DNA from: Macrostomum lignano | Taxonomy: Eukaryota | Length of the DNA: 64,000 nt | Direction of reading: 5' to 3' | Assembly: GCA_002269645.1 (NCBI GenBank) | Contig: NIVC01001500.1 | Location: forward strand, 62,001-126,000 | Shown: piece by piece, positions 369-45,425 of the stretch | Layout: every line of letters starts with the position of its first letter | Position numbering within the stretch: position 1 is the first letter of the stretch | Notes under the pieces: generated by a model | Seen by the model: the letters and a program-made list of their open reading frames with translations, nothing else | Databases searched by the model: none | What the model was told of the DNA's origin: nothing | Program-made: the position numbers and the translations under genes

Positions 369-10433
<10,065 letters not shown>

Positions 10434-12243: not shown

Positions 12244-15200
12244 TCAAGAAAGGTCGCAACGATGCTTTTTCTTCCCAGTCTTTCTCTCCACCTGTTTGAT
12301 GGTCGGCTCAGCCGAAGCAGCAGAAGGGGAGCAGTCCACAGTAACAGGAGACCTGCTCTGACCAGCCAGTCTGTACTGACTCATAATTCGATCGATTGCA
12401 ACCGACTCAGACTCAAATTCAATAACATCAGTGGGTTGAATCCAGTTAGCATCGGGCTTGGACTGCTCAAGCATCCAGCGATATTTTCTAGCCTGCTCTA
12501 TGGAGGGCCGGTTGCCTGGCTGCTGGGACATGAGCTCGGCGATCAGTTCCCGGCACGGCTTGCTAACCCAATCTGGCAGGGTGTAGCTACCGGCTGCTAT
12601 GGCCTCGTAGATTTGCAGCACGCTGCGACCCGTGTACGGCACTTGGCCGCTGACCATGAAGTAGAGGCTGACGCCGCAGCAGTACATGTCCAGTTTGCGG
12701 CCGGAAAGCCGCCTGCAACCTGTGGCCACCTGGCGATGAGGGATGACGGATGGGCAGTCAGCTGAGCTGCTCAAGCGGTACACGCTTGTCGTGCGATTCA
12801 CAGCCATGAGGGCCAACCTCCAAAGCGCAGAGAGTGTACATGCCTAACGGTTAGACAGTCAGGGGCCGCTGTACATCCTGTGTGAGCGTGTGCATGAGTG
12901 CTGTGCCTGCGTACAGTATTGGCGCGCTTGTGTGTGCTCAGGAGTCAGTCCCGATGAAAACGGTTACCCAGGCCAAGAAGTGTTGGGCTGCGCCCTTCCA
13001 GTGCGTATGTACTCGTACTTGTGTATCAATTTTGCTTGCCATCCCGCCCCGTCCCCCGTCTCGCTCCCGGGCCAGAGTTTGTGAGAGGCGCAAGTCTCAA
13101 CCCTGGCCTAGCCCTTTGCACCCAGCCCCCGGCCCAACCTCTGTCCAATCTGGGTGCCGACCCTACCCCCTCCCTCGTTGCCCGCCTCACCCTGGGGCTG
13201 CTCGTATTGGCTGGCTGGTTGATAAGCCGGCTGGGCCCCAGGGTTTGGCTCGCCCTCTCCAGTCTGCCCCACTCCTTCCCCCTTTTTTGTGTATTATTTA
13301 AATGCTAGCCCTGAGCGGGCTGCGCTCCACGTTGGTGTCCGCTCGTTGTTCATCTGCACTTTGCTCGTTCGTCTGCATTCTGGTTGTTCGTTCGCTTAAC
13401 TGTTGTGATCGATTGCAATTTGTTCGATTAAACTGTCTGCTCTCGGCCAATAAATACTTCGTTAAATTCCAAGTATCTGACTGGAGAGGTGAGCTCGAGC
13501 TTTCGTTCTTCTGGGTTGCCGCGTGGGGCCGGGATCTGCAGGGACACCTGGGAACGGTGAACTCTCGCCGATCCCAGGGTGTTCGGTCAGGCGAACTCTC
13601 GCCGAACCGAGCGAGACAGGGTAGGAATAGCCGGGGTGAGGGCTGGGACCGGGGTGTCTCAGGCGGGGAGGGCCCGAACCTTGACCCGTCCAGCGGCCAT
13701 TAGGCCGAGACACAACAGAAGCGTCCCAGAGTCACTTGCGTCGCTGCAGATATGCTGTAGGTAACACAGGTAAAGTAGGAAAGCAGTGATTCCTAGATAA
13801 CTCTAAAGCAACAAGATGTCACGGTGCAAGTCACCAAAGAGTCGTCAAACAGTCGCCTAAGAGTCAATTTGAAGCGTTTTATTGTCCGCGACTTTAAAAC
13901 GACTCTGAGACGACGCAAGTGACTCTGGGGTCGTAGAGTCGTACCTGAGGCGTGCTGGGGTCGCTTTAGAGAGAGAGAGAGAGATAAGTGCTTTCGGCGC
14001 CTCAGCCATTGATCAGGCTCTTACGCCACTAGAGATATATAGATTCCAAGTTGGGAGTGTACTAATGTACACTAAGATCCTAATTAGAGCTAAGAGGACT
14101 GTACATCGAGCCGGGCAAGCGGCGCCAGTCAGGCCGAGAGCGGGCCCTACCCCCGACCCTCAGAGCGTACGCCTACCCCAAACCCAATTGGCTTATCTAA
14201 ACCTCCCCGGGGCTGGCAGGGGTTAAGTGAACCTCTGGGGCAGCCCGTGCCTTCTCCTGGGTTAGAAAATGCCAAAAAATGGTCCGAAGACCTCCCCACG
14301 GCCGTGGCCACCCGGAGGAGCCTCCCCACCTACCAGACCCCGGGTACTCATGCCAAGACAGTCTCTTATTTTTGAAGCGGCAGGAGGGCTAATCGCCGGG
14401 ACTATTTCACCCTTTGCTTCGCCAACCCGCCATTTCTATAGTGACCGTGCCAACGGTCTCGTCCTGCTCAGACTCAGTCCTGGTTCTGGCACACTCCAGC
14501 TTTAATAGGGTCGCTGGCTGTTCGCTCAGAGGGCACTCCGAGGGGGACCGTCAGAGCACCAACTGGAACAGGTATAGGCCTGCCTTCCTATACAGCTACC
14601 CACAGCCCTTCCTGATCCACTATTACCCTCCAACCCTACCCAGCCTACTAACTCATTACAAGCTTTCGGCCAGGCAGAGACAAGTTTCACAGGTTAGGCG
14701 CCTCTATGCGAGACAAAACCAGGGGTCGCTTAGAATCACAGAGCTGCGTCTAAAGCGCATCTGCGTCACTTAATGAATCAAAATCGCATTTTGCATTTGT
14801 AACAACTCTATATATTCAACTTGAGTTAGTAGTGCTGTGCTTACACAACGACTGTTGGACGACTTTTCGCAACTATTTTACGATTCTGCAACTCTCACGT
14901 GATGGGCCCGTGACTCAACAGTCGCTAGAGTCACTAGTGAGATGTTTGCAATAACTCTATAGCGATTCTGGTCACGATAACGTGTCCACAGCCTTCCTAC
15001 GAATCATTATTTTATAATAAATCACAGGTCAGGGTTCAGGTAATCACGGATGAGGATTAAGCCCTTTGGACTCGATAGAAATTTGGGATTTTAGGACTAC
15101 ACAAGTGCTAGTTGGCTGGCTACAAAGACTTTATTTTGATACCTCGGGCGGTTGAATAGCGGGCGTGGCCTGACTGCCAGTGATGACGTCATCATCGGCA

Positions 15201-15844
15201 GAATCGGCGGTCGGACCCAGCTCCGACAGCCATTCGCAGACGCCAAAATCGGTTATTTTAATTTCGTGTACTTCTGTCAGCAACAAATTGCCAGGCTTGA
15301 GGTCTTTGTGCACCAGGCGCATGGAGTGCAGGTACTCGACGCCATTTAGTAGTTGGGCAAAATAGCAGCGAGCCTGAGATTCTGGCAGGTGACGGCAGGT
15401 AGGCAACTCGCCGTCTGACGTGTCGCTAAATGATGCAGGATCCAGGCCTTTAGTCTGCAGGTCATGCAGACTGCAGACTGCCCACTCCATCACTAGGTAA
15501 CGCTTTGCACCATCATTAGAAAGAAAATCAGCGAAGAGTTTAGCGACATTTTTATGCTCCAATCGTTTCATTGCATTGGCCTCGCGATCGACATTTTCAA
15601 CTCCGCGCGGCAGTTTTTTTACTAATCTAAGAGTGATGATCTTCACAGCCAATCGGCGCTGGTCGTCAATGTCAACGCAGAGTTTGACTTTGCCATAGGA
15701 GCCTTCGCCTAGCAGGCCGCCAACTAAATAACGATTTAGCAGCAGTTTTGGCACTTTAGTGGCATAAACTATTGGTGGGGCATCCAGCTTGGTTATCAAA
15801 TCATTTAAATTGCATGAGAATGAATCATCAGCCATTGCTTCCAT
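12244..15844 (-). CDS. STK11: STK11/LKB1(PAR-4)-like serine/threonine kinase, 395 aa. Exons 15844-15143 and 12729-12244
   Basis: LLGEGSYGKVK, AVK, HKDLKPGNLLLT, DFG and QPPE are LKB1-type motifs. Donor GAG|gtatca at 15142 and acceptor cgccag|GTG at 12729 give QPPE-VATG...GRKLDMYCCGVSLY, which follows LKB1 QPPEIANG...GFKVDIWSAGVTLY. Divergent, so it may be a paralog. Confidence 0.85.
12790..12950 (+). mobile_element. Headless copy of the same SINE family
   Basis: GCCAACCTCCAAAGCGCAGAGAGTGTACATGCCTAACG...GGCCGCTGTACA..TGTGTGAG aligns to the reverse complement of 19800-19970. Confidence 0.7.
12981..13717 (+). mobile_element. Solo LTR, 737 bp, inside the STK11-like intron
   Basis: Termini TGTTG...CAACA; 4-bp TSD GAAG (12977-12980 and 13718-13721); TATA-like TATTTAAA at about 13295 and AATAAA at 13449-13454. 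Confidence 0.7.
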
Positions 15845-17764: not shown

Positions 17765-18591
17765 TTTAATGAAACTCGCCAACTGGCGTTACCGGTAAGC
17801 TAAAGAACATCATTTTCCATTCGGACAGCCAAGCTGCCTTGTTCGCCATCAGTGGCTGCAGCAGCAATTCTGCTACAGAATCACCAACAAAATCACCCTC
17901 AAGTGGGTTCCGGGGCATGTGGGGATCCGAGGGAATGAGTTGGCTGACGCCCTTGCGAAAGTTGGCGCCTCTGGCTCCGATCTCTCGGTCCCGAACCCCT
18001 TGTCCCGATTCCTGGCTGTGTCATCGACTCGCGCATCAAAGCGTGGATCAGGACCCCGCACCGCTCGACTTGGGCGAACTGCACCACCTGCAGGCAATCC
18101 AGAGGCGCTGTCCCTCAGCCCTCTCACCAGCTCCGGAAGCTCCTCTTGCGCCTCTTGCGCAGAGACATCCGGGCTGCCACCCTTTCAGGTCACGGCTGCT
18201 TCTCTAGGCACCAGTACCTGCAGGGCAACGCCACCAACGCCATCTGCAGTTTCTGTAACTCAGGTGACGAAACCGCTGAGCATTTCGTCAGCATCTGTCC
18301 CGCCTTTACGCGAGCCAGACTCACTTACCTTGGGCCACACACATCTATTACTGAAGCGTGCAAACCCGAAAACTTAAATCAGCTCATGCGCTACCTCCGG
18401 GCCACCCACAGGGCTGAACTCTCCTTTCCAGAGAGCACTATAGCTGCTGGCGACACTGGGGGACCTCCCTGGGCGGCGCCAACCCTTCGTCCATAGCGAC
18501 GCGTCGGCCGTTCAGGGATTAGCGGAATGGGCGTTCGCGCCTTCCCGCTGTGTCCCCCCGGGACAGCCCTGCAGCTAAGTCAAAGTAAGTC
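17765..18591 (+). mobile_element. 5'-truncated non-LTR retrotransposon 3' end (RNase H plus Cys/His motif; LOA/R1-like, I group)
   Basis: SDSQAALFAI, LKWVPGHVGIRGNELADALAK, then LSGHG...CSFC...ETAEHFVSICP with frameshifts; hairpin-rich 3' UTR; TAAGTCAA repeat tail. Confidence 0.85.
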
Positions 18592-25634: not shown

Positions 25635-26509
25635 AAAGCAACAACAACAACAACAGCAAAAATCCCAGTGACAAAACAACAACAACAACAGGAACAATCC
25701 CAGTGACAACACAACAACAACAACAGGAAAAATCCCAGTGACAAAACAACAACAACAACAGGAACAATCCCAGTGACAAAACAGCAACAACAACAGGAAC
25801 AATCCCAGTGACAAAACAACAACAACAACAGGAACAATCCCAGTGACAAAACAACAACAACAACAGGAACAATCCCAGTGACAAAACAGCAACAACAACA
25901 GGAACAATCCCAGTGACAAAACAGCAACAACAACAGGAACAATCCCAGTGACAAAACAACAACAACAACAGGAACAATCCCAGTGACAAAACAGCAACAA
26001 CAACAGGAACAATCCCAGTGACAAAACAACAACAACAACAGGAACAATCCCAGTGACAAAACAACAACAACAACAGGAACAATCCCAGTGACAAAACAGC
26101 AACAACAACAGGAACAATCCCAGTGACAAAACAACAACAACAACAGGAACAATCCCAGTGACAAAACAACAACAACAACAGGAACAATCCCAGTGACAAA
26201 ACAGCAACAACAACAGGAACAATCCCAGTGACAAAACAGCAACAACAACAGGAACAATCCCAGTGACAAAACAACAACAACAACAGGAACAATCCCAGTG
26301 ACAAAACAGCAACAACAACAGGAACAATCCCAGTGACAAAACAACAACAACAACAGGAACAATCCCAGTGACAAAACAGCAACAACAACAGGAACAATCC
26401 CAGTGACAAAACAGCAACAACAACAGGAACAATCCCAATGACAAAACAACGACAACAACAACAACAACAGCAACAATCCCAATGACAAAACAATAACAAC
26501 AGCAACAGC

Positions 26510-26550
<41 letters not shown>

Positions 26551-26589
26551 AAACAGCAACAATCCCAATGACAAAACAATAACAACAGC

Positions 26590-26621
<32 letters not shown>

Positions 26622-26745
26622 AAACAAAAACAACAATCACAATGACGAAACAGCAGCAACAATCCCAATGACAAAACAACAACAACAACAACAACAACAA
26701 ATATCAAGTATCAACAAATATCACAAATATCAACAACAACAACAG
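25635..26745. repeat. 33-bp CAA-rich minisatellite (CAACAACAACAGGAACAATCCCAGTGACAAAA) grading into (CAA)n
   Basis: More than 20 copies; related units recur at about 27385-27543, 27793-27893 and 32507-32590. Confidence 0.96.
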
Positions 26746-27382
26746 CTTGACCTTGTCGAAGAACAGAGACCTAATCATCTTGACCGACAGTAAGTCCGCC
26801 GTCGTGGCCACTGCGAATGAGAGTTACCAGAACGGGAGCCAATTCAGATTGATCGGCAGACTCAGGAAGGCGAGCGAGTGGTGTAGCATCTCGATACAAT
26901 GGATCCCCGGCCACTGTGGCATCAAGAGTAATGAGAGGGCTGACGAGCCGGCTAAGCAGGCCGCGCAGTTGCCCCAAGGGCAGACGGCTGTCGAGGACGA
27001 GGCGTTGCTCAGGCACTTGAAGCACCGGTGGAGGCCCAGCATAAATGACGCCCGTCTGAGATCAGTGTACGGAGGTGCGATCGAACGCGTCGACTGTGGC
27101 AGAAAAGTGGCTACCATCTTATCGCAGCTTTGATCGGGCCACTGTAAGCTCGCCAAGTATTGGAGACAGAAGGTGGGTCTGGAAGGCGAAGGTGTTTGCG
27201 AGCTATGCGGAGAAATGGAAGATAAAGATCACTGGTGGAAGTGCGCGCGTTGGGATGGTCTCCGTCAGCGTATCGGTTTGATGGAGTTGGAAGACCTCAG
27301 GAAGGAGAACATGGTTCCTAAGAGGTTCCTAAGGGCGGCCCACCCGCAGTGGATTGCCTGATGGTACGGGGCCGAGGACACA
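26746..27382 (+). mobile_element. I-group LINE 3' fragment A (RNase H to 3' end), decayed
   Basis: LTDSKSAV, IQWIPGHCGIKSNERAD, LSQL*SGHC, CELC...HWWKC; flanked by CAA repeats on both sides. Confidence 0.85.
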
Positions 27383-27543
27383 CACAACAACAACAGCAAC
27401 AACAATCCTAATGACAAAAAATAACAAAACAATAACAACAGCAAAAATTCCATTGATTAAACAACAACAGCCCCATTGATAAATCAACAACAACAGCAAA
27501 AATTCCATTGATTAAACAACAACAACAACAACAACATCAGCAA

Positions 27544-27657
27544 CACCCCCTGGGATTTACTCCCAGCCTGCTGGGTAATCAGCAGGCCCTATCCGGCGCC
27601 GCGTCTTTGTCGCGGGGGGGAGGCAACGCCCGTTCTTCGGGCGGCGAAGAGCGCCGG
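27544..27657 (+). ncRNA. HDV-like self-cleaving ribozyme (predicted by manual folding)
   Basis: P1 27544-27550/27614-27620 (6 of 7 bp); P2 CCGGCGC 27593-27599/GCGCCGG 27651-27657; P3 GCG/CGC around L3 TCTTTGT; P1.1 C27605-G27622 and T27606-A27621; GCAA; P4 CGCCCG/CGGGCG; J4/2 GCGAA with catalytic C at 27645. Confidence 0.75.
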
Positions 27658-27792
27658 AAATCGGTCACCGCTCCTGGCTCAGGGGCGGTGGATGTGGCTC
27701 GGTCCGGCCCTCTGTGCTCAGCCTTTGTCGCTGGCTCTGTCAGCGGTAGGGGTTTGGTACCTGGTCCGGTTATTCCGAGCTCGGTCCGCAGT
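27544..27792 (+). mobile_element. Short non-autonomous retroelement B with 5' HDV-like ribozyme and (CAA)n 3' flank
   Basis: 249 bp GC-rich, hairpin-rich segment with no recognisable protein motif, embedded in CAA repeats. Ends TCCGCAGT(CAA)n, like LINE D TCCGCACT(CAA)n. Confidence 0.7.
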
Positions 27793-27893
27793 CAACAACA
27801 ACAACATCAGCAACAATCTCAATGACAAAACAACAACAACAACAACAGCAACAATCTCAATGACAAAACAACAACAACAACAACAGCAACAAT

Positions 27894-28450
27894 TCCGGGC
27901 AGCCGCCGCCGAGGCCGGCATTGCGTGAGCCCGCGAGTGCTCCGTCATCGCCTGGACGGACGGCTCCGCTGAGGAGGGTACCAGCAACGGGGCGGCGCCG
28001 CCGTCATCGAGTTCAGGGACGGTCGCCCCGCGGTCACCGTCCGCGCCGCGGCCGGTGCTCTGTGCAGCAGCTTCCAGGCCGAACTTGTCACGATCCAGAC
28101 CGCCCTGTCCTACTGCCTCCGTGAGGGCCCGGCCCTGCCCCGCAGCATGGCGGTTCTCACTGACAGCCTCAGCGCTCTGACCGCCCTGGAGCAGGGGCCC
28201 GCCCGCCAGTCTACCGCTACCGGTGCGACCTGCTGGCAGCTCATCGCCGGCTCCTCCGGCCGCACTGATTTTCTTTTCTGCTGGGTCCCCGGGCACGCCG
28301 GCATCGATGGCAACACCGCCGCGGGCCTTGCGGCCGCCGAAGCCGCCACTCTCGCGCAAGCGCACAACAGCAACAATCCTATCGTGCACGTGCCTATCAG
28401 CATTAGCTCGGCCCGCGCCGCCATCCGCCGCGATCGCCGCGTCCTCGACG
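27894..28450 (+). mobile_element. I-group LINE RNase H fragment C, decayed
   Basis: WTDGSAEEG / GGAA..AAGALCSSFQAEL..TDSLSAL..WVPGHAGIDGN; TGA at about 27927 and a frameshift at about 27990; the last catalytic Asp is replaced by Gly. Confidence 0.85.
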
Positions 28451-28459
28451 CCCGCATTC

Positions 28460-31400
28460 TCGGCCCACAACGAAATGCACGCGGACGGAAAGAAGGACCT
28501 GCCAATAACAAGGGCCTCAAGGTCCTGCAATGGAATGCGGACGGCATCCGAAACAAAATGGGAGAACTGGAGGAGCTGGTCCAACGCCTCAAAGTTGATG
28601 TTGTCATGATCCAAGAATCTAAGCTTGACCCCGTCTCCCGCACGCCAAAGATCCCCGGCTTTACCACCGTGAGAAAAGACCGACGAACGCTACGTTCCAG
28701 CGAGATGTACAAGGGAGGAGGCCTCCTCACGTTCATCCGCCAAGAAACCCCCTTCCGGCGGCTCAAAGGCTGGAGTGGGGGCACGGTGAAAGGCTGCCGC
28801 ATCGTGATCAACCTTAGCGCCAAACAGCGTCTCGTGCTCACTAACATCTACCGGCCGCCCATCAGGCGCAGTGCTGGCGCCGACTGCCGGGAGCACCCGG
28901 ACATCGATCTCTGGCTGAAGCCGCACCAGTGCGAGATTATTGCTGGCGACTTTAATATCCATCACACGACCTGGGGTAGTCTGCCTGGCCAGGGGCCGAG
29001 GGCGCCGAACAAGCCAAAGCCCTGCTGGAGTGGTGTGACAGTAATGGGTATTGTGTCCTCAACTCGGGCTCCCTCAACCTGTCTCGATCGCCGCGACGGT
29101 GGAGAGAGTGCCCCCGACATCAGCCTCGCTAGCGCTTGGCCTCGACGACCTCTGCTCGTGGAGGCCCTTGACGAACTGGGCTCTGCCCACAAACCCATTC
29201 TCATCACTGTGGATGGCGACCGCGCTAGCACCGACCAGAAGATTTGTCTCGCCTGGGCCTGGCAGAAAGCTGACTGGAACAGCTACCAGGCCCAGCTCGA
29301 AGACGATAGCAATGAGCTCAACAACGGCACTGTCAAGCAGCAAATCCAACGCCTCTGCTTTCGTATGAGTAAGGCGGCCAAAGCTTGCATTCCCATGAAG
29401 CGCGTCTCCTCCAAAAACAAGCCCTACTGGGATTCGGAGCTCTCTAGTCTTCGGGACGAAAGAAACAGACTCAGATCCCGTGGCGGTGACCCGGACGAGT
29501 GGAAGCGCAAGAATGCCGAGCTCAACAGGGCCTGCGCGGAGAAAAAAGCCGCCTTCTGGCAGGAATTTGTGCAGGACCTGTCTAGTTCCTCTGACATCAA
29601 AAAAATGTGGCGTACCATTAAAACCCTAAGTGCTGGAGAGCAACCGACCGCGAAGAACGAAATCCTAGTGGCGGACGGAAAGGAGTGCAGCTCGGATCGC
29701 GACAAAGCAAATGCTTTTGGCCGACACTACGCCAAGATCAGCACCCTCAAGCATGACGCCGCTGACCGCGCCTTCAAAGTTAGCACTGCGAAGCCTTTGA
29801 ATAAGTATCCCACGGGGACCTCCGAGTACGATTGCGCCCTCACCATGGAAGAACTCAAACGAGTCATCTCACACCCCGACGTCACCAAAAAAGCCGGCCC
29901 CGACGGCATCGAAGCGGCTTTCTTCAGACACCTGCCGGACTCGTGGCTCACGGCCTGGCTCACGGTCTTTAATCGGTGCTGGTCCCTAGGGCACTGCCCG
30001 GGAGTCTGGAAGAAGGCGGTTATCGTCCCACTTTTGAAAGAGGGCAAAGACCCAGCCAACTGCAGCAGCTTCCGGCCTGTTAGTCTCACTTCCATCTGTG
30101 TTAAAATCATGGAGCGCATTGTGATGGACCGGCTCATGCACTGGATCGAACTCAACAACACGCTGCAACCGTGGCAAGCTGGTTTTCAGAGAGGGCGTAG
30201 CTGCGAAGAACAAGTGGCGCGTCTGGTCCAGGAAATCCAAGACCACTGGGAACAACGCCCGCCTCGCAAACGATCGCTGTCACCCTTGACTGCTCCCGCG
30301 CCTTCGACCGGGTCTGGCGTACCCGCCTCCTTGCCCGTCTCATGGATGAGGGAGTCCCGGGTCGCATGGTGCACTGGTTTGCCAGCTTCCTGGAGGGGCG
30401 CCAGATTGCCGTCCGCGTGGGCGATACGATTGGCAAATGGAGGCCGCTTAAGGAGGGGGTGCCGCAGGGGGCAGTGTGCTCGCCGGTGCTCTTCCTCCTG
30501 TACATCAATGACTGGGCGGACTCCCTGGTCCCAGATGTCAACTACGCCGGCTTTGCTGACGACCTGGGCGTCTGGGCCTCGGGCAACAACATCCAGCAGA
30601 TTGCGGAGCGCCTTCAACTGGCCATCGATCGCATCGACGCCTGGGCCACAGATCTCCGTATCGATCTCAATCCCCTCAAAACTGAATGCTGGATCTTCTC
30701 GAGAGACCGCAGGGACCGCGACCGTACCCTCAACCTGTGCATCCGAGGCCAGCAACTCCCAACCAGGCAGGAGCTGCTCTACCTGGGTGCCTGGATCGAC
30801 AGCGGCCTGCTCTTCAAGCGGCAGTCCGACGAAGTTGCCGCCAAACTGCGCCGTCGTTGTGCTGTCCTGCGTGCACTGTCGCATCGCGAATGGGGGTGGG
30901 ACCGCGCCACGCTTAGGACGGTGTATAAAGCCGTGGTGGAGTCTGTGGTTTGGCATGCGGCTGTAGCCTGGATGCCCTGGCTCTCCCAGACTCGCCTCAA
31001 TGACCTGGACAGAGCCCAAAAAGTGGCTCTGAGACTTGTCTCTGGTCTACCAAGCTCGACTCCTAGCGTGGCCATCTACCGTGAGGCCGATTGTGTGCCC
31101 ATCAGCCTGGAGGCCAAACGACGAGCGCTGGTCGCCGTCGAAAAGGCGCTCCGGCGGTCCGAGGCGGACCCCTGGAGGTCCAGGTGTGAACTCAGGACCC
31201 CCACCCGGCTCAAAGCCAACCGTGGCCTCCGCGAACAAGCTCACTCAGTGCTCAACGAGATCCTCCCACACAGCCGTCTCCCGGAAGCCTGGGTCAGAGC
31301 CCCGCCGTGGGACACGCTCAGCGGCTCGGACCGGCTGAGGCTCTATCCGTAACTGGTGAGACCGCTCCGTAAATCCGACAGTCAGATCACCCGCGATCCG

Positions 31401-32506
31401 ATCATCGCCGACACCTTCCGAGAACGCCTGCCCAGTACCTGCTACTTCACGGACGGCTCCGCTTCGGGTGGCACCGCCAACGGCGGCGCCGCCTGGATCC
31501 TGTTTGACCAGGGGCCTTTTCATATTACCAATTCCAGAACCAAAATCGGTTCGGAATTCCAAGAAAAACAGCAGTATAACTATTTAACTCTGTTAATATT
31601 TGACTGCCTTAACAACCTAACTTAGCACAATTTTTCACTTTCTTCTTGGCGATTGTCATTCAATAATAAAAACGTTATAGCACGTATCTCCCTCTAGTTA
31701 TGGAGACAAAAAGTTATACTTCACAAATTGGTTCTGGTTCTGGAACCAGAACAAGCAATATGAAAAGGCCCCAGGAGACGGGCACGATCATCCAGGGCGG
31801 CTACTCTGCAGCGGGCAGATGGTGCAGCTCCTTCGAAACCGAGCTCCGCGCGCTCCGAGATGCCGTCGTGGATGTCATCCAGCAGGACGTTGACACCGCC
31901 GCCCTCCTCACCGATAGCCAGGCGGCCGTCAGAGCTCTGATAGCCGACCGGCCCACCACTAACGCGCTACTCGAAGACCTGAAGGCCCTTCTTCGGCAAG
32001 CAGCTGGCCGTTGCGTTCTCACGATCCAGTGGATTCCCGGCCATGCTGGCGTGGCTGGTAACGAGTTCGTCGATCGCGAGGCCAAAGCCGCAGCTCTTCT
32101 GGATCAAGCCCAAGTGGCCATCTCGCTCGAAGCAGCCAAGCGGTTTATCTACCGCCGTCTCGAGTACCTTCCGGACCTGACCGGCCATCTGAAGGAGACT
32201 TACCAAGGACGCATCACGCACCATAACGGCAGCCGGCGTGAGCAAGTCCTCGTTGCGCAGATGAGAGCTGGACACTGCCCCTCCTCGGCCTATTACGCTA
32301 AGCGCATCGGCAAAGCTCAGCTGGCCGAGTGCAGGCTTTGCGGGCTCGAGGTAGACCAATTCCACCTGGTCCACTGCCCTGCGATCGATGTCGCCCGAAG
32401 ACAGAACAACATTTGCGATCTGAAAGACCTAGCCGATGGGAACCTGGTGGCGCGGCTCCTGGAGTGGATCGAATGGACCCCGCTCTAGGCGGCTGCACTC
32501 CGCACT
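28460..32506 (+). mobile_element. Near full-length Ingi-like (I group) non-LTR retrotransposon D: APE endonuclease, RT, RNase H, C-terminal Cys/His motif; disrupted
   Basis: EN: VLQWNADG, IQESKL, GGGL, GDFNIHH, PDISLA, SAHKPI. RT: GPDGI, FRPVSLTS, QAGF, GVPQGAVCSP, FADD, YLG. RNH: FTDGS, TEL, TDSQ, WIPGHAGVAGNEFVD. Also QMRAGHC and CRLC..H..C. Frameshift at about 30268, TAA at 31350, MITE insertion 31512-31771; 3' end in (CAA)n. Confidence 0.92.
31512..31771. mobile_element. PIF/Harbinger-type MITE, 260 bp
   Basis: Perfect 15-bp TIRs GGGCCTTTTCATATT (31512-31526) and AATATGAAAAGGCCC (31757-31771); CAG duplicated on both sides. Removal restores the LINE frame (WILFDQ-ETGTIIQ). Confidence 0.85.
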
Positions 32507-33364
32507 CAACAACAACAACAACAACAACAGCAACAATCCCAATGACAAAACAACAACAACAACAACAGCAACAATCGCAATGACAACAAACTGCAACAAA
32601 TAATCAACAATATAAAATTTGGACAATCTATAAAAGCACGGGCTAAAAGCTCTTACTCATGCTACTATACATTAAATAGGAAGTTAGTCCAGCTTTCACG
32701 GAAATCTGTAGTTTCCAACAGCCTATCCGGGAAAAGATATAAATTCTATAAATATTCATCATTCTATCAGCTATAAAAAAGTGCAAACTGACTGACCCAA
32801 CCACAGGCAGATCCCCAACCTCAAAGTTTCAGGCGAATCTCGAAATTTCTCCAACCCGCTGTGTCTCTGCGTGTGTGCTCTCCTCATTCTCTCATCCCAC
32901 TGGCACATTTGTCTCACTCATGGATGGAGGCCCTCGACTGTCACCAGAGGCTGGGGGAGGGCTGTGCTTCAAGCTCTCTTATGCTCTCCCCTAGGGGATA
33001 TAGTGGAGCAGCAGTGGAAAAAAAATTAAAGAGAAATTCTAGGGAATGAAGGCTCTTTGGAAGCGCCACTGTGGCACACACAGGGTGAGCCATGGCTATG
33101 ACGGCAATGACTGTGATGAGATTTCAGAGACGGACAAAGATTGCGAGTCTCTACGGGCCTCATCTATTTGCAGAATAATACTATATCTACAGATTTTATA
33201 TTGGTGTTGTACATGTAAATGAGAGGGCAATAGAATGTTTGTCATACAGATGTGTGCCTGCCACATGAACTATTCATCACACGACATCGCAAAACAAAAT
33301 CTATTATCTAAGTCGACTCTAGAGGCTCTGATGTTCTTTTTCTGGGCAAATCCCAGTTTCTTGT

Positions 33365-36667: not shown

Positions 36668-41101
<4,434 letters not shown>

Positions 41102-42567: not shown

Positions 42568-45425
<2,858 letters not shown>

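What the first reader, a model, noticed from the sequence alone, without database searches (positions are those of the whole stretch)
27544..27657. HDV-like self-cleaving ribozyme heading a 249-bp non-coding retroelement
Seen: every element of the HDV double pseudoknot is present in order. P1 is CACCCCC/GGGGGGG with one A.G mismatch at the CAA junction. Two extra J1/2 hairpins (TGGGA/TCCCA, CCTGCTG/CAGCAGG) follow, then a 7-bp P2, a 3-bp P3, a 7-nt L3 TCTTTGT with U20 and G25 in the canonical positions, J1/4 GCAA, a 6-bp P4, and J4/2 G-C-G-A-A with the catalytic C (27645). P1.1 shows a compensatory change (U22-A38 instead of C22-G38), which argues for conserved structure rather than chance. 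Established: HDV-like ribozymes cap the 5' ends of R2, RTE, LOA and Ingi/L1Tc retrotransposons; the L1Tc type has a C-G first pair as here; trypanosome RIME/NARTc/SIDER are short ribozyme-headed derivatives. Inference: this is an undescribed flatworm-type short element that liberates its own 5' end from read-through transcripts of the CAA array.
Basis: partly seen in the sequence, partly recalled or inferred. Interest (0 to 1): 0.92.

Follow-up and report, generated by a model that had tools for sequence, protein, structure and literature searches.

The report
HDV-like ribozyme heading short retroelement
A 247-249-bp retroposed DNA copy, flanked by a target-site duplication, begins exactly where a hepatitis-delta-type self-cutting RNA fold would cut; this arrangement is already known from other jumping genes, so it is a credible new example, not a new kind of thing.

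Summary
Window 27544-27657 (+) contains every helix and conserved nucleotide of an HDV-like double pseudoknot in the right order. Rfam gives only a sub-threshold match: RF02682, 30 bits against a cut-off of 44, E = 0.0013 locally and 0.14 for the whole window. That model cannot see P2 and mis-places P1. A strict descriptor of my own hits only this site in the window and nothing in about 4.5 Mb of shuffled sequence.

New evidence comes from a 23-bp direct repeat, CAACAACAACAACATCAGCAACA. It occurs only twice in the window and brackets 27546-27792. Removing the insert restores a perfect 38-mer satellite unit. The unit was therefore retroposed, and its 5' end coincides, within a 2-nt CA microhomology, with the predicted cleavage site.

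It lies in the same CAA-rich satellite, in the same orientation and at similar unit positions as three neighbouring degenerate APE-RT-RNase H LINE copies. It ends in ..TCCGCAGT; one of those LINEs ends in ..TCCGCACT.

Best reading: a non-autonomous, ribozyme-headed non-LTR element, comparable to R2/R1 SIDEs and NARTc.

Not shown: cleavage activity, covariation (single copy, no outside homologues found), the autonomous partner's 5' end, or the host. The host is a metazoan; "flatworm" is unproven. New member of a known kind.

The parts
27523..27545 (+). Left copy of the 23-bp target-site duplication, CAACAACAACAACATCAGCAACA. The last two bases (CA) are ambiguous with the element's first two bases.
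   Evidence: Exact 23-mer present only at 27523 and 27793. The ACATCAGCAACA variant occurs only at these two places in 64 kb.
27544..27551 (+). P1 5' strand and predicted cleavage site. Register i: cleavage 5' of C27544, CACCCCC, 7 bp with an A.G mismatch. Register ii: cleavage 5' of C27546, CCCCCU, 6 bp.
   Evidence: Sequence reading, descriptor hits starting at 27544-27546, energies, TSD boundary.
27551..27565 (+). J1/2 hairpin 1 (UGGGA-UUUAC-UCCCA).
   Evidence: MFE fold.
27566..27587 (+). J1/2 hairpin 2: 9 bp capped by a GUAA (GNRA) tetraloop. Together with hairpin 1 it forms a structured peripheral domain between P1 and P2.
   Evidence: MFE and centroid fold. Role of structured J1/2 domains in large HDV-like ribozymes: PMC4908430.
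27593..27599 (+). P2 5' strand, CCGGCGC.
   Evidence: Seven Watson-Crick pairs with 27651-27657.
27601..27613 (+). P3 (GCG/CGC) enclosing the 7-nt L3, UCUUUGU. U27604 and G27609 are at the positions of the conserved U.G reverse wobble. C27605 and U27606 form P1.1.
   Evidence: (aligned to the UCUaCGU consensus).
27614..27620 (+). P1 3' strand, GGGGGGG.
27621..27626 (+). P1.1 3' strand (A27621, G27622) followed by J1/4, GCAA.
   Evidence: Matches the AGGCAAC consensus of RF02682 exactly.
27627..27643 (+). P4 hairpin: 6 bp, CGCCCG/CGGGCG, loop UUCUU.
27644..27650 (+). J4/2, GCGAAGA, with the candidate general-acid cytosine C27645.
   Evidence: Aligned to the GGCUAAGA consensus.
27651..27657 (+). 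P2 3' strand, GCGCCGG. This is the 3' end of the ribozyme.
27658..27792 (+). Structured non-coding 3' body of the short element. It ends ..GGTCCGCAGT directly before the CAA repeat. Inferred to be the part recognised by a LINE reverse transcriptase.
   Evidence: Fold of -70.5 kcal/mol, z = -3.67. Last 9 nt match LINE_A's pre-tail 9 nt at 7 of 9 positions. No protein or DNA similarity to LINEs otherwise.
27793..27815 (+). Right copy of the target-site duplication. The first (CAA)4 could alternatively be the element's own tail.
27816..27893 (+). Continuation of the 38-mer CAA-rich satellite into which the element inserted.
   Evidence: TRF period 38, 98% matches. Empty-site reconstruction.
26747..27522 (+). 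LINE_B: a 5'-truncated LINE 3' end (RNase H domain plus a C-terminal Cys/His motif, stop at 27361) and its degenerate CAA-rich tail. The short element inserted into this tail.
   Evidence: Pfam RNase_H, tblastn, sequence.
27894..28365 (+). LINE_C: an RNase H-only LINE fragment, truncated at both ends.
   Evidence: tblastn 34% identity to LINE_A RNase H. Junction with the satellite at unit position about 25.
28384..32620 (+). LINE_A: a 5'-truncated, frameshifted APE-RT-RNase H LINE. Its ORF pieces lie in three different frames: 28147-30966, 30342-31352 and 31700-32488. The 3' UTR ends ..CTCCGCACT, followed by a 38-mer CAA tail at 32507-32620. It is a candidate relative of the autonomous partner.
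   Evidence: Pfam Exo_endo_phos, RVT_1, RNase_H, ORFs, 3' end.

Best explanation
Window 27546(27544)-27792 is one retroposed copy of a short, non-coding, non-autonomous non-LTR retroelement. Its first ~112 nt encode an HDV-like self-cleaving ribozyme.

Proposed mechanism, steps inferred unless marked:
1. The element has no recognisable promoter of its own. It is transcribed as part of a longer read-through transcript of the CAA-rich satellite and LINE cluster.
2. The ribozyme folds into the nested double pseudoknot: P1, P1.1, P2, P3 and P4, with a two-hairpin J1/2 domain that draws P1 and P2 together.
3. C27645 in J4/2 acts as general acid. The RNA is cut immediately 5' of P1, leaving a 5'-OH on the element's first nucleotide.
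4. The structured 3' body, ending ..TCCGCAGT plus (CAA)n, is bound in trans by the reverse transcriptase/endonuclease of a satellite-targeting APE-RT-RNase H LINE.
5. That LINE copies the RNA by target-primed reverse transcription into the 38-mer satellite unit.

Shown here: the fold, the target-site duplication, the coincidence of the element's 5' end with the predicted cleavage site, and the target and orientation shared with LINEs.

Not shown: cleavage, transcription, and mobilisation in trans.
For: Fold:
- All HDV-like elements are present in order.
- Rfam RF02682 gives 30 bits, E = 0.0013 locally. It matches the consensus in L3, AGGCAAC, P4 and GGC.AAGA.
- P2 (7 Watson-Crick pairs) and P1, which the model ignores or mis-places, are independently present.
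- The strict descriptor hits once in the window and 0 times in about 4.5 Mb of shuffles.
- Nested sub-structures score -47 to -53 kcal/mol. The P1 duplex adds -10.7 to -11.6, so the full pseudoknot competes with the -58.8 kcal/mol nested MFE.

Retroposition:
- The exact 23-bp direct repeat is unique to the two flanks.
- Removing the insert and one repeat copy gives a perfect 38-mer unit that differs by one base from its neighbour.
- The inner boundary of the repeat is 27545/27546. The CA microhomology also allows 27543/27544. Both are the two possible P1 starts.

Link to LINEs:
- The element sits in the same satellite and orientation as LINE_B, LINE_C and LINE_A.
- The four 5' junctions fall at unit positions about 19-30, and every 3' junction falls at the start of the (CAA)n block.
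- The last 9 nt before the tail match LINE_A's at 7 of 9 positions.

Non-coding and not a pol III SINE:
- No protein relatives of the only open frame.
- No tRNA in or near the element (the only ARAGORN call in the window is at 7992-8086) and no other Rfam match to it at E <= 1.

Precedent:
- HDV-like ribozymes define the 5' ends of R2, R4, Dong, Baggins and L1Tc (PMC3774820).
- R2 and R2/R1 SIDEs are a ribozyme plus a LINE 3' end, found interspersed with R1 copies at the target (PMC3414825).
- L1Tc starts with C1 (PMC3185411).
Against: - The Rfam score is below the curated cut-off (30 vs 44 bits), with a window-level E of only 0.14. No other Rfam HDV family matched.
- There is a single copy in the window. 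No homologue was found outside, so there is no covariation evidence at all.
- The cleavage-site pair is C-G, not the usual G.U wobble.
- Register i has an A.G mismatch at the second P1 pair. A P1 mismatch abolished in vitro cleavage in the horseshoe crab R2 (PMC3774820).
- Apart from 7 of 9 terminal nt and the tail, there is no detectable similarity to the LINE copies in the window.
- Neither LINE in the window retains a 5' end, so it is unknown whether any autonomous element carries this ribozyme.
- Five contigs carrying four related LINEs from elsewhere (one at 45% identity but with almost no 5' flank, three distant) show no HDV-like hit.
Confidence: 0.7

Rival explanations
1. The fold descends from a genuine HDV-like ribozyme, but this copy or family is catalytically dead. 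It would be a retroposed relic whose P1 and cleavage-site pair no longer support cleavage.
For: - C-G instead of G.U at the cleavage site, and an A.G mismatch at P1 pair 2 in register i.
- P1 mismatches correlate with loss of in vitro activity in some R2 ribozymes (PMC3774820).
- The neighbouring LINEs are all truncated or frameshifted, so the cluster is old.
Against: - All other core positions are intact: catalytic C, L3 U and G, P1.1, P3, and perfect P2 and P4.
- Register ii gives a mismatch-free 6-bp P1.
- R2 P1 stems are 6-7 bp, and a quarter carry mismatches.
- L1Tc cleaves with C1.
- The TSD is still perfect over 23 bp, so the insertion is not ancient.
Confidence: 0.15
2. Chance look-alike: a GC-rich stretch that happens to satisfy the HDV descriptor, with no ribozyme ancestry.
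For: - Rfam is below threshold, window-level E = 0.14.
- My analytic estimate of about 1e-9 per position still allows a few strict-descriptor hits per gigabase genome.
- The P1 requirement alone is weak, because any C-run within 80 nt would satisfy it.
Against: - 0 strict hits in about 4.5 Mb of shuffles.
- Consensus-level sequence matches in J1/4 and J4/2 that the descriptor does not use.
- The P1 start coincides within 0-2 nt with an independently defined retroposition boundary.
- The context is exactly the kind in which such ribozymes are known.
Confidence: 0.07
3. The ribozyme is the 5' UTR of one long LINE spanning 27546-32620: ribozyme, then an internal CAA repeat, then the ORF. It would not be a separate short element.
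For: - An open frame runs from about 27895 through the RNase H-like piece into the APE-RT region up to 30966.
- HDV-like ribozymes normally head full-length LINEs.
Against: - The unique 23-bp duplication brackets only 27546-27792 and restores an intact satellite unit.
- 27894-28365 is an out-of-order RNase H fragment, only 34% identical to LINE_A's own RNase H.
- That fragment is separated from LINE_A by a satellite remnant, ACAACAGCAACAATC.
Confidence: 0.06
4. The ribozyme serves the upstream LINE_B. It would trim that element's read-through transcript at the end of its CAA tail, as a 3'-end processing device.
For: It lies 185 nt downstream of LINE_B's stop codon, directly after its tail.
Against: - The TSD shows it arrived as a separate insertion into a pre-existing tail.
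- LINE_A's tail is not followed by any such fold.
Confidence: 0.02

Closest known systems
R2 SIDEs and R2/R1 hybrid SIDEs of Drosophila (Eickbush & Eickbush 2012, PMC3414825)
   Same: - Short non-autonomous non-LTR elements made of a 5' HDV-like ribozyme plus a 3' end used by a LINE's TPRT machinery.
- Hybrid SIDEs have target-site duplications and lie interspersed with the autonomous element's copies in tandem at a specific repeated target. This matches the arrangement seen here.
   Different: - SIDEs are demonstrable internal-deletion derivatives with clear identity to R2 or R1. Here the body has no detectable similarity to the LINEs in the window beyond about 9 terminal nt and the tail.
- The target is a CAA-rich 38-mer satellite, not rDNA.
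- SIDE ribozymes were shown to cleave; this one was not tested.
L1Tc ribozyme (L1TcRz) and its non-autonomous relatives NARTc, RIME and SIDER in trypanosomatids (PMC3185411, PMC4035085)
   Same: - An HDV-like ribozyme occupies the very first nucleotides of an APE-RT-RNase H LINE and of its short non-coding derivatives.
- The element starts with C, so the first P1 pair is C-G.
   Different: - L1TcRz is a minimal 77-nt ribozyme with a single-pair P1.1 that doubles as an internal promoter. Here the ribozyme is about 112 nt, with a 2-bp P1.1 and a 42-nt structured J1/2 region (two hairpins plus a 5-nt linker).
- The host is a metazoan, not a kinetoplastid.
- No sequence relationship was tested or seen.
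Large HDV-like ribozymes with a structured J1/2 (P1.2) peripheral domain, e.g. drz-Agam-2 (PMC4908430)
   Same: A structured insert between P1 and P2, which in those ribozymes accelerates cleavage by bringing P1 and P2 together.
   Different: Here there are two side-by-side hairpins, one with a GNRA loop, rather than a single closing helix. Any effect on activity is unknown.
Rfam RF02682, HDV-F-prausnitzii (minimal bacterial HDV-like ribozyme)
   Same: Best covariance-model match. Same L3 pattern (UCU..GU), the same A-G P1.1 partner, and AGGCAAC and GGC.AAGA junctions.
   Different: - Score of 30 bits is below the 44-bit cut-off.
- The P1 strand is displaced by a 42-nt insert.
- Eukaryotic retroelement context. 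This is a resemblance of the core, not family membership.
Satellite- or microsatellite-specific LINEs with 5' HDV-like ribozymes, such as Dong and R4 (named in PMC3774820)
   Same: Target-specific elements that depend on co-transcription with a repeated target and use a 5' ribozyme to free their RNA.
   Different: From my own knowledge, Dong and R4 use a restriction-like endonuclease. The LINEs here have an APE endonuclease and an RNase H domain. Their clade was not determined.

Membership tests
HDV-like self-cleaving ribozymes | Nested double pseudoknot with P1, P2, P3, P1.1 and P4 in the canonical order and connectivity | tested here: met
   Reading of 27544-27657, descriptor hit, helices P2, P4 and the J1/2 hairpins in the MFE fold, energies.
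HDV-like self-cleaving ribozymes | Catalytic cytosine in J4/2 followed by purine-rich A-minor nucleotides (G-C-N-R-A) | tested here: met
   G27644-C27645-G-A-A, aligned to GGCUAAGA of RF02682.
HDV-like self-cleaving ribozymes | 3-bp P3 closed by a 7-8-nt L3 carrying the conserved U and G of the reverse wobble | tested here: met
   GCG/UCUUUGU/CGC, with U27604 and G27609. Importance of that G: PMC3774820.
HDV-like self-cleaving ribozymes | P1.1 mini-helix between L3 and the nucleotides 3' of P1 | tested here: met
   C27605-G27622 and U27606-A27621. The same U/A and C/G pattern is in the RF02682 consensus.
HDV-like self-cleaving ribozymes | G.U wobble (G at +1) at the cleavage-site end of P1, and a mismatch-free 6-7-bp P1 | tested here: not met
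   +1 is C, paired with G27620, in both registers. Register i has an A.G mismatch; register ii is a clean 6 bp. A known active exception has C1: L1Tc.
HDV-like self-cleaving ribozymes | Score at or above a curated covariance-model threshold (Rfam) | tested here: not met
   No gathering-level hit. Best is RF02682 at 30 bits vs 44.
HDV-like self-cleaving ribozymes | Covariation that maintains the helices among homologues | not testable with these tools
   Single copy in the window. No homologues retrieved.
HDV-like self-cleaving ribozymes | Site-specific Mg2+-dependent self-scission giving a 5'-OH product, abolished by mutating the catalytic C | not testable with these tools
   Requires an in vitro transcription and cleavage assay.
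Ribozyme-headed non-autonomous non-LTR elements (SIDE / NARTc type) | Retroposed unit with a target-site duplication | tested here: met
   Unique exact 23-bp repeat at 27523-27545 and 27793-27815. The empty site reconstructs a satellite unit.
Ribozyme-headed non-autonomous non-LTR elements (SIDE / NARTc type) | The element's 5' end coincides with the ribozyme cleavage site | tested here: met
   TSD inner boundary is 27545/27546, with CA microhomology back to 27543/27544. P1 starts at 27544 or 27546.
Ribozyme-headed non-autonomous non-LTR elements (SIDE / NARTc type) | 3' end shared with an autonomous LINE | tested here: inconclusive
   Only 7 of 9 pre-tail nt match LINE_A, plus the same CAA 38-mer context, target position and orientation. 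No longer similarity.
Ribozyme-headed non-autonomous non-LTR elements (SIDE / NARTc type) | The same ribozyme at the 5' end of the autonomous partner (origin by internal deletion) | not testable with these tools
   All LINE copies in the window are 5'-truncated. The window ORF is not on record elsewhere.
Ribozyme-headed non-autonomous non-LTR elements (SIDE / NARTc type) | No coding capacity of its own | tested here: met
   The one open frame has no relatives. blastx against LINE proteins gives all E > 1.
Classical pol III SINEs (tRNA-, 5S- or 7SL-derived head) | 5' part derived from a small RNA gene with an internal pol III promoter | tested here: not met
   ARAGORN finds no tRNA here. The Rfam E-value scan of 27300-27900 shows only the HDV-like hit plus noise.

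The most novel reading that the evidence does not exclude
The element is not a deletion derivative of a LINE. It would be an independent 'ribozyme-SINE' lineage: a structured non-coding RNA that acquired an HDV-like ribozyme, with a two-hairpin GNRA-capped J1/2 domain and a C-start P1, as its only 5'-end-defining device. It would parasitise satellite-specific APE-RT-RNase H LINEs in a poorly sampled spiralian-like animal. That would extend the 'co-transcribe with a repeated target, then self-cleave' strategy from rDNA (R2, R1 SIDEs) to an ordinary CAA minisatellite. It would also extend it to a region of the animal tree where the two flatworm LINE/ribozyme papers I retrieved describe twister variants in Schistosoma (PMC8501958) and an R2 HDV-like ribozyme in the planarian Schmidtea (PMC3774820).
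Probability: 0.3. Interest if true: 0.6.

Novelty: new member of a known kind. Interest (0 to 1): 0.45.

Why it matters
If active, this is a compact natural example (about 250 nt in all) of the minimal RNA needed for non-LTR retrotransposition: a self-cleaving 5' cap plus a 3' recognition domain. It sits in a satellite-targeted system outside rDNA and outside insects and trypanosomes.

It offers a clean test of two questions. First, do target-specific LINEs in general rely on read-through transcription plus ribozyme processing? Second, how far can the HDV core tolerate a C-G cleavage-site pair, P1 slippage and a two-hairpin J1/2 domain?

Practically, such minimal ribozyme and 3'-module pairs are the kind of template that R2-based insertion tools use. 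For genome annotation, it shows that sub-threshold Rfam HDV hits can be rescued by checking P2, P1 and TSD boundaries.

Tried and rejected
- **Rfam at gathering thresholds over the whole window:** nothing.
- **Other copies in the window:** 38-nt core pattern with up to 3 mismatches and blastn with word size 9. Only the CAA repeats recur.
- **Outside copies via a translated open frame** against 5.8 billion proteins: no hit.
- **Metagenome contig scan with a ribozyme-core DNA pattern:** no match.
- **Metagenome scan for LINE relatives** with a 3-sequence profile: no confirmed locus.
- **Exact-protein look-ups:** the window's RNase H ORF and the M. lignano protein P0002 are not on record. P0001's contig has no 5' flank.
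- **Five contigs carrying four related LINEs (L001-L005):** one at 45% identity with almost no 5' flank, three distant; scanned with Rfam at E <= 1, no HDV-like hit.
- **Similarity of the short element to LINE_A, LINE_B or LINE_C:** none above shuffled controls at DNA level. blastx E-values are all above 1.
- **tRNA or pol III-SINE origin:** rejected.
- **Reading it as a 3'-processing ribozyme of LINE_B, or as the 5' UTR of a 5-kb LINE:** rejected because of the TSD.
- **Identifying the host:** only 'metazoan' is secure. The MCTP exon is 37% identical to molluscs and 34% to M. lignano. The RT is 46% identical to M. lignano.
- **Literature search for Macrostomum plus ribozyme:** nothing relevant.
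Full report
**1. What is in the sequence**

Window 27544-27657 (+) reads:

CACCCCC-UGGGAUUUACUCCCA-G-CCUGCUGGGUAAUCAGCAGG-CCCUAU-CCGGCGC-C-GCG-UCUUUGU-CGC-GGGGGGG-AG-GCAA-CGCCCG-UUCUU-CGGGCG-GCGAAGA-GCGCCGG.

- P1: 27544-27550 with 27614-27620, with an A27545.G27619 mismatch.
- Two J1/2 hairpins. The MFE fold extends the second to 9 bp with a GUAA (GNRA) loop.
- P2: 7 Watson-Crick pairs, 27593-27599 with 27651-27657.
- P3: 3 bp.
- L3: 7 nt, with U and G at the conserved positions.
- P1.1: 2 bp, C27605-G27622 and U27606-A27621.
- J1/4: GCAA.
- P4: 6 bp.
- J4/2: G-C27645-G-A-A.

**2. Is it more than chance?**

Rfam at curated thresholds finds nothing in the 64 kb. In E-value mode the only relevant match is RF02682 (HDV-F-prausnitzii) at 27588-27658, scoring 30 bits against a cut-off of 44. 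E is 0.0013 for the 601 nt searched and 0.14 for the whole window. There it is the only hit outside simple repeats.

The alignment shows why the score is low. The core is matched at consensus level: P3, L3 UCU..GU, the P1 3' strand, AGGCAAC, P4 and GGC.AAGA. The model has no P2, and it cannot bridge the 42-nt J1/2 insert. It therefore pairs the G-run with the wrong upstream heptamer.

P2 and the true P1 are thus extra, independent evidence. A strict descriptor of my own required:
- P3 with 3 Watson-Crick pairs;
- L3 of the form U....G;
- P1.1 with 2 Watson-Crick pairs;
- P4 of at least 5 Watson-Crick pairs;
- J4/2 of the form CNRA;
- P2 with 7 Watson-Crick pairs;
- P1 with at least 6 of 7 pairs.

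It hits this site only, on either strand. It hits nothing in 40 dinucleotide shuffles of the window plus 400 shuffles of the GC-rich neighbourhood, about 4.5 Mb. A loose version gives 5 hits against 0.75 expected, so only the strict version is informative.

My rough analytic expectation is about 1e-9 per position. That is negligible for the window, but it allows a few hits per gigabase. The context evidence below therefore matters.

**3. The unit was retroposed, and its 5' end is the cleavage site**

The 23-mer CAACAACAACAACATCAGCAACA occurs exactly twice in the window, at 27523-27545 and 27793-27815. Its diagnostic ACATCAGCAACA variant occurs nowhere else.

Deleting 27546-27815 leaves CAACAACAACAACATCAGCAACA+ATCTCAATGACAAAA. 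This is a perfect 38-mer unit one base different from the next unit. That is a classical target-site duplication around a 247-bp insert.

The target continues with CA after the duplication and the insert also begins CA-like. The true 5' end can therefore be 27544, 27545 or 27546.

Those positions are the two possible P1 starts:
- Register ii: starts at C27546, with a clean 6-bp CCCCCU/GGGGGG P1 and a 4-bp P3 (C27600-G27614).

Register ii is marginally more stable: -50.1 vs -47.3 kcal/mol for the nested part, and -11.6 vs -10.7 for the P1 duplex. It also avoids a mismatch next to the scissile bond.

R2 ribozymes have P1 stems of 6-7 bp (PMC3774820). A P1 mismatch abolished in vitro cleavage in one of them. 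I therefore consider register ii at least as likely.

**4. Surroundings**

The insert sits in a cluster of non-LTR elements, all on the + strand, embedded in a CAA-rich 35-38-mer satellite (array 25640-26746):
- LINE_B: 26747-27361, RNase H plus a Cys/His motif, 5'-truncated, with a degenerate tail up to 27545.
- The short element.
- 2.7 satellite units.
- LINE_C: 27894-28365, an RNase H fragment.
- A 15-nt satellite remnant.
- LINE_A: about 28384-32506, APE, RT and RNase H by Pfam. It is 5'-truncated and split over three reading frames. It is followed by the same 38-mer at 32507-32620.

The four 5' junctions fall at unit positions about 19-30. All 3' junctions fall at the start of the (CAA)n block. 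This points to a common, sequence-specific insertion machinery.

The short element ends ..GGTCCGCAGT and LINE_A ends ..CTCCGCACT immediately before the tail. That is 7 of 9 identical at a fixed position, roughly p = 1e-3 by my estimate.

The 3' 135 nt of the short element fold unusually well, z = -3.67. Beyond this there is no DNA or protein similarity to the LINEs. There is also no tRNA or small-RNA head, and no relatives for the single open frame.

**5. Mechanism (inferred from known systems)**

1. The satellite and LINE cluster is transcribed by read-through.
2. The HDV-like fold cuts 5' of P1 and releases an RNA with a 5'-OH at the element's first base.
3. The structured 3' end and (CAA)n tail are used in trans by a satellite-specific APE-RT-RNase H LINE for target-primed reverse transcription.

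This is the logic demonstrated for several known systems:
- R2 (PMC3774820) and its SIDEs, including R2/R1 hybrids. The hybrids carry TSDs and lie interspersed with R1 copies at the target (PMC3414825).
- L1Tc, NARTc, RIME and SIDER (PMC3185411, PMC4035085).

Structured J1/2 domains accelerate large HDV-like ribozymes (PMC4908430). L1Tc shows that C at +1 is compatible with activity.

**6. What could not be done**

There is only one copy in the window. No outside copy or close LINE with a 5' end was reachable. Five contigs carrying four related LINEs (one at 45% identity with almost no 5' flank, three distant) carry no HDV-like hit. Covariation, copy number, the autonomous partner's 5' end and catalysis therefore remain open.

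The host is a metazoan. An MCTP exon is 37% identical to molluscs and 34% to Macrostomum lignano. The best RT match is M. lignano at 46%. 'Flatworm' is possible but unproven.

**7. Verdict**

This is a real HDV-like ribozyme fold that defines the 5' end of a TSD-flanked, non-coding, probably LINE-dependent retroelement. It is a new member of a known kind.

Confidence in this reading is about 0.7. The main residual alternatives are that this copy is catalytically dead (0.15) or that the fold is a chance look-alike (0.07).

Interest is moderate at 0.45. It is a neat, compact, testable example in an under-sampled animal and in a satellite-targeted system, but it is conceptually anticipated by SIDEs and NARTc.

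Noticed in passing
window 25640-32620: Four non-LTR insertions (LINE_B, the short element, LINE_C, LINE_A) lie head-to-tail on the + strand within one CAA-rich 35-38-mer satellite. Their 5' junctions fall at unit positions about 19-30, and every 3' junction falls at the start of the (CAA)n block. This suggests satellite-specific LINEs, or LINE tails that seed the satellite.
   Followed up: partly
window 27894-30966: One open frame runs from the LINE_C RNase H fragment across a 15-nt satellite remnant into LINE_A's APE-RT region (ORF 28147-30966, 939 aa). This is most likely a chimeric artefact of nested insertions, not an RNase H-APE-RT protein.
   Followed up: partly
window 28384-32488: LINE_A is degenerate. 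The APE plus N-terminal RT, the C-terminal RT, and the RNase H plus Cys/His tail lie in three different frames (28147-30966, 30342-31352, 31700-32488). It lacks a 5' UTR and start codon.
   Followed up: yes
window 36668-37909 (-) and 39803-41101 (-): Two large exons of a multiple-C2-domain transmembrane protein (MCTP; Pfam C2 and PRT_C). They are separated by a 1.7-kb (TCTA)n tract at 37961-39625. Best matches are molluscan MCTPs at only 37% identity, so the host is a poorly sampled metazoan.
   Followed up: partly
window 12244-12816 (-) and 15131-15844 (-): Two ORFs carrying the C-terminal and N-terminal halves of a protein kinase domain. They are probably exons of one gene.
   Followed up: no
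window 1-64000: Extraordinary density of micro- and minisatellites (78 TRF rows). Examples: 2.9 kb of (AGTT)n-type repeat at 42570-45424, 1.7 kb of (TCTA)n, and many 20-46-nt minisatellites between GC-rich unique segments.
   Followed up: no
window 7992-8086 (+): ARAGORN calls a 95-nt tRNA-Arg(CCT) next to a GT-rich repeat. The length implies an intron or a false positive.
   Followed up: no
window 17892-17969 (+): Short RNase H-like remnant (26 aa, about 50% identical to the LINE RNase H domains). It is another decayed LINE fragment.
   Followed up: no
window 9936-10433 (+): Weak, below-cut-off Pfam match to a nuclear hormone receptor ligand-binding domain (E = 0.0029).
   Followed up: no
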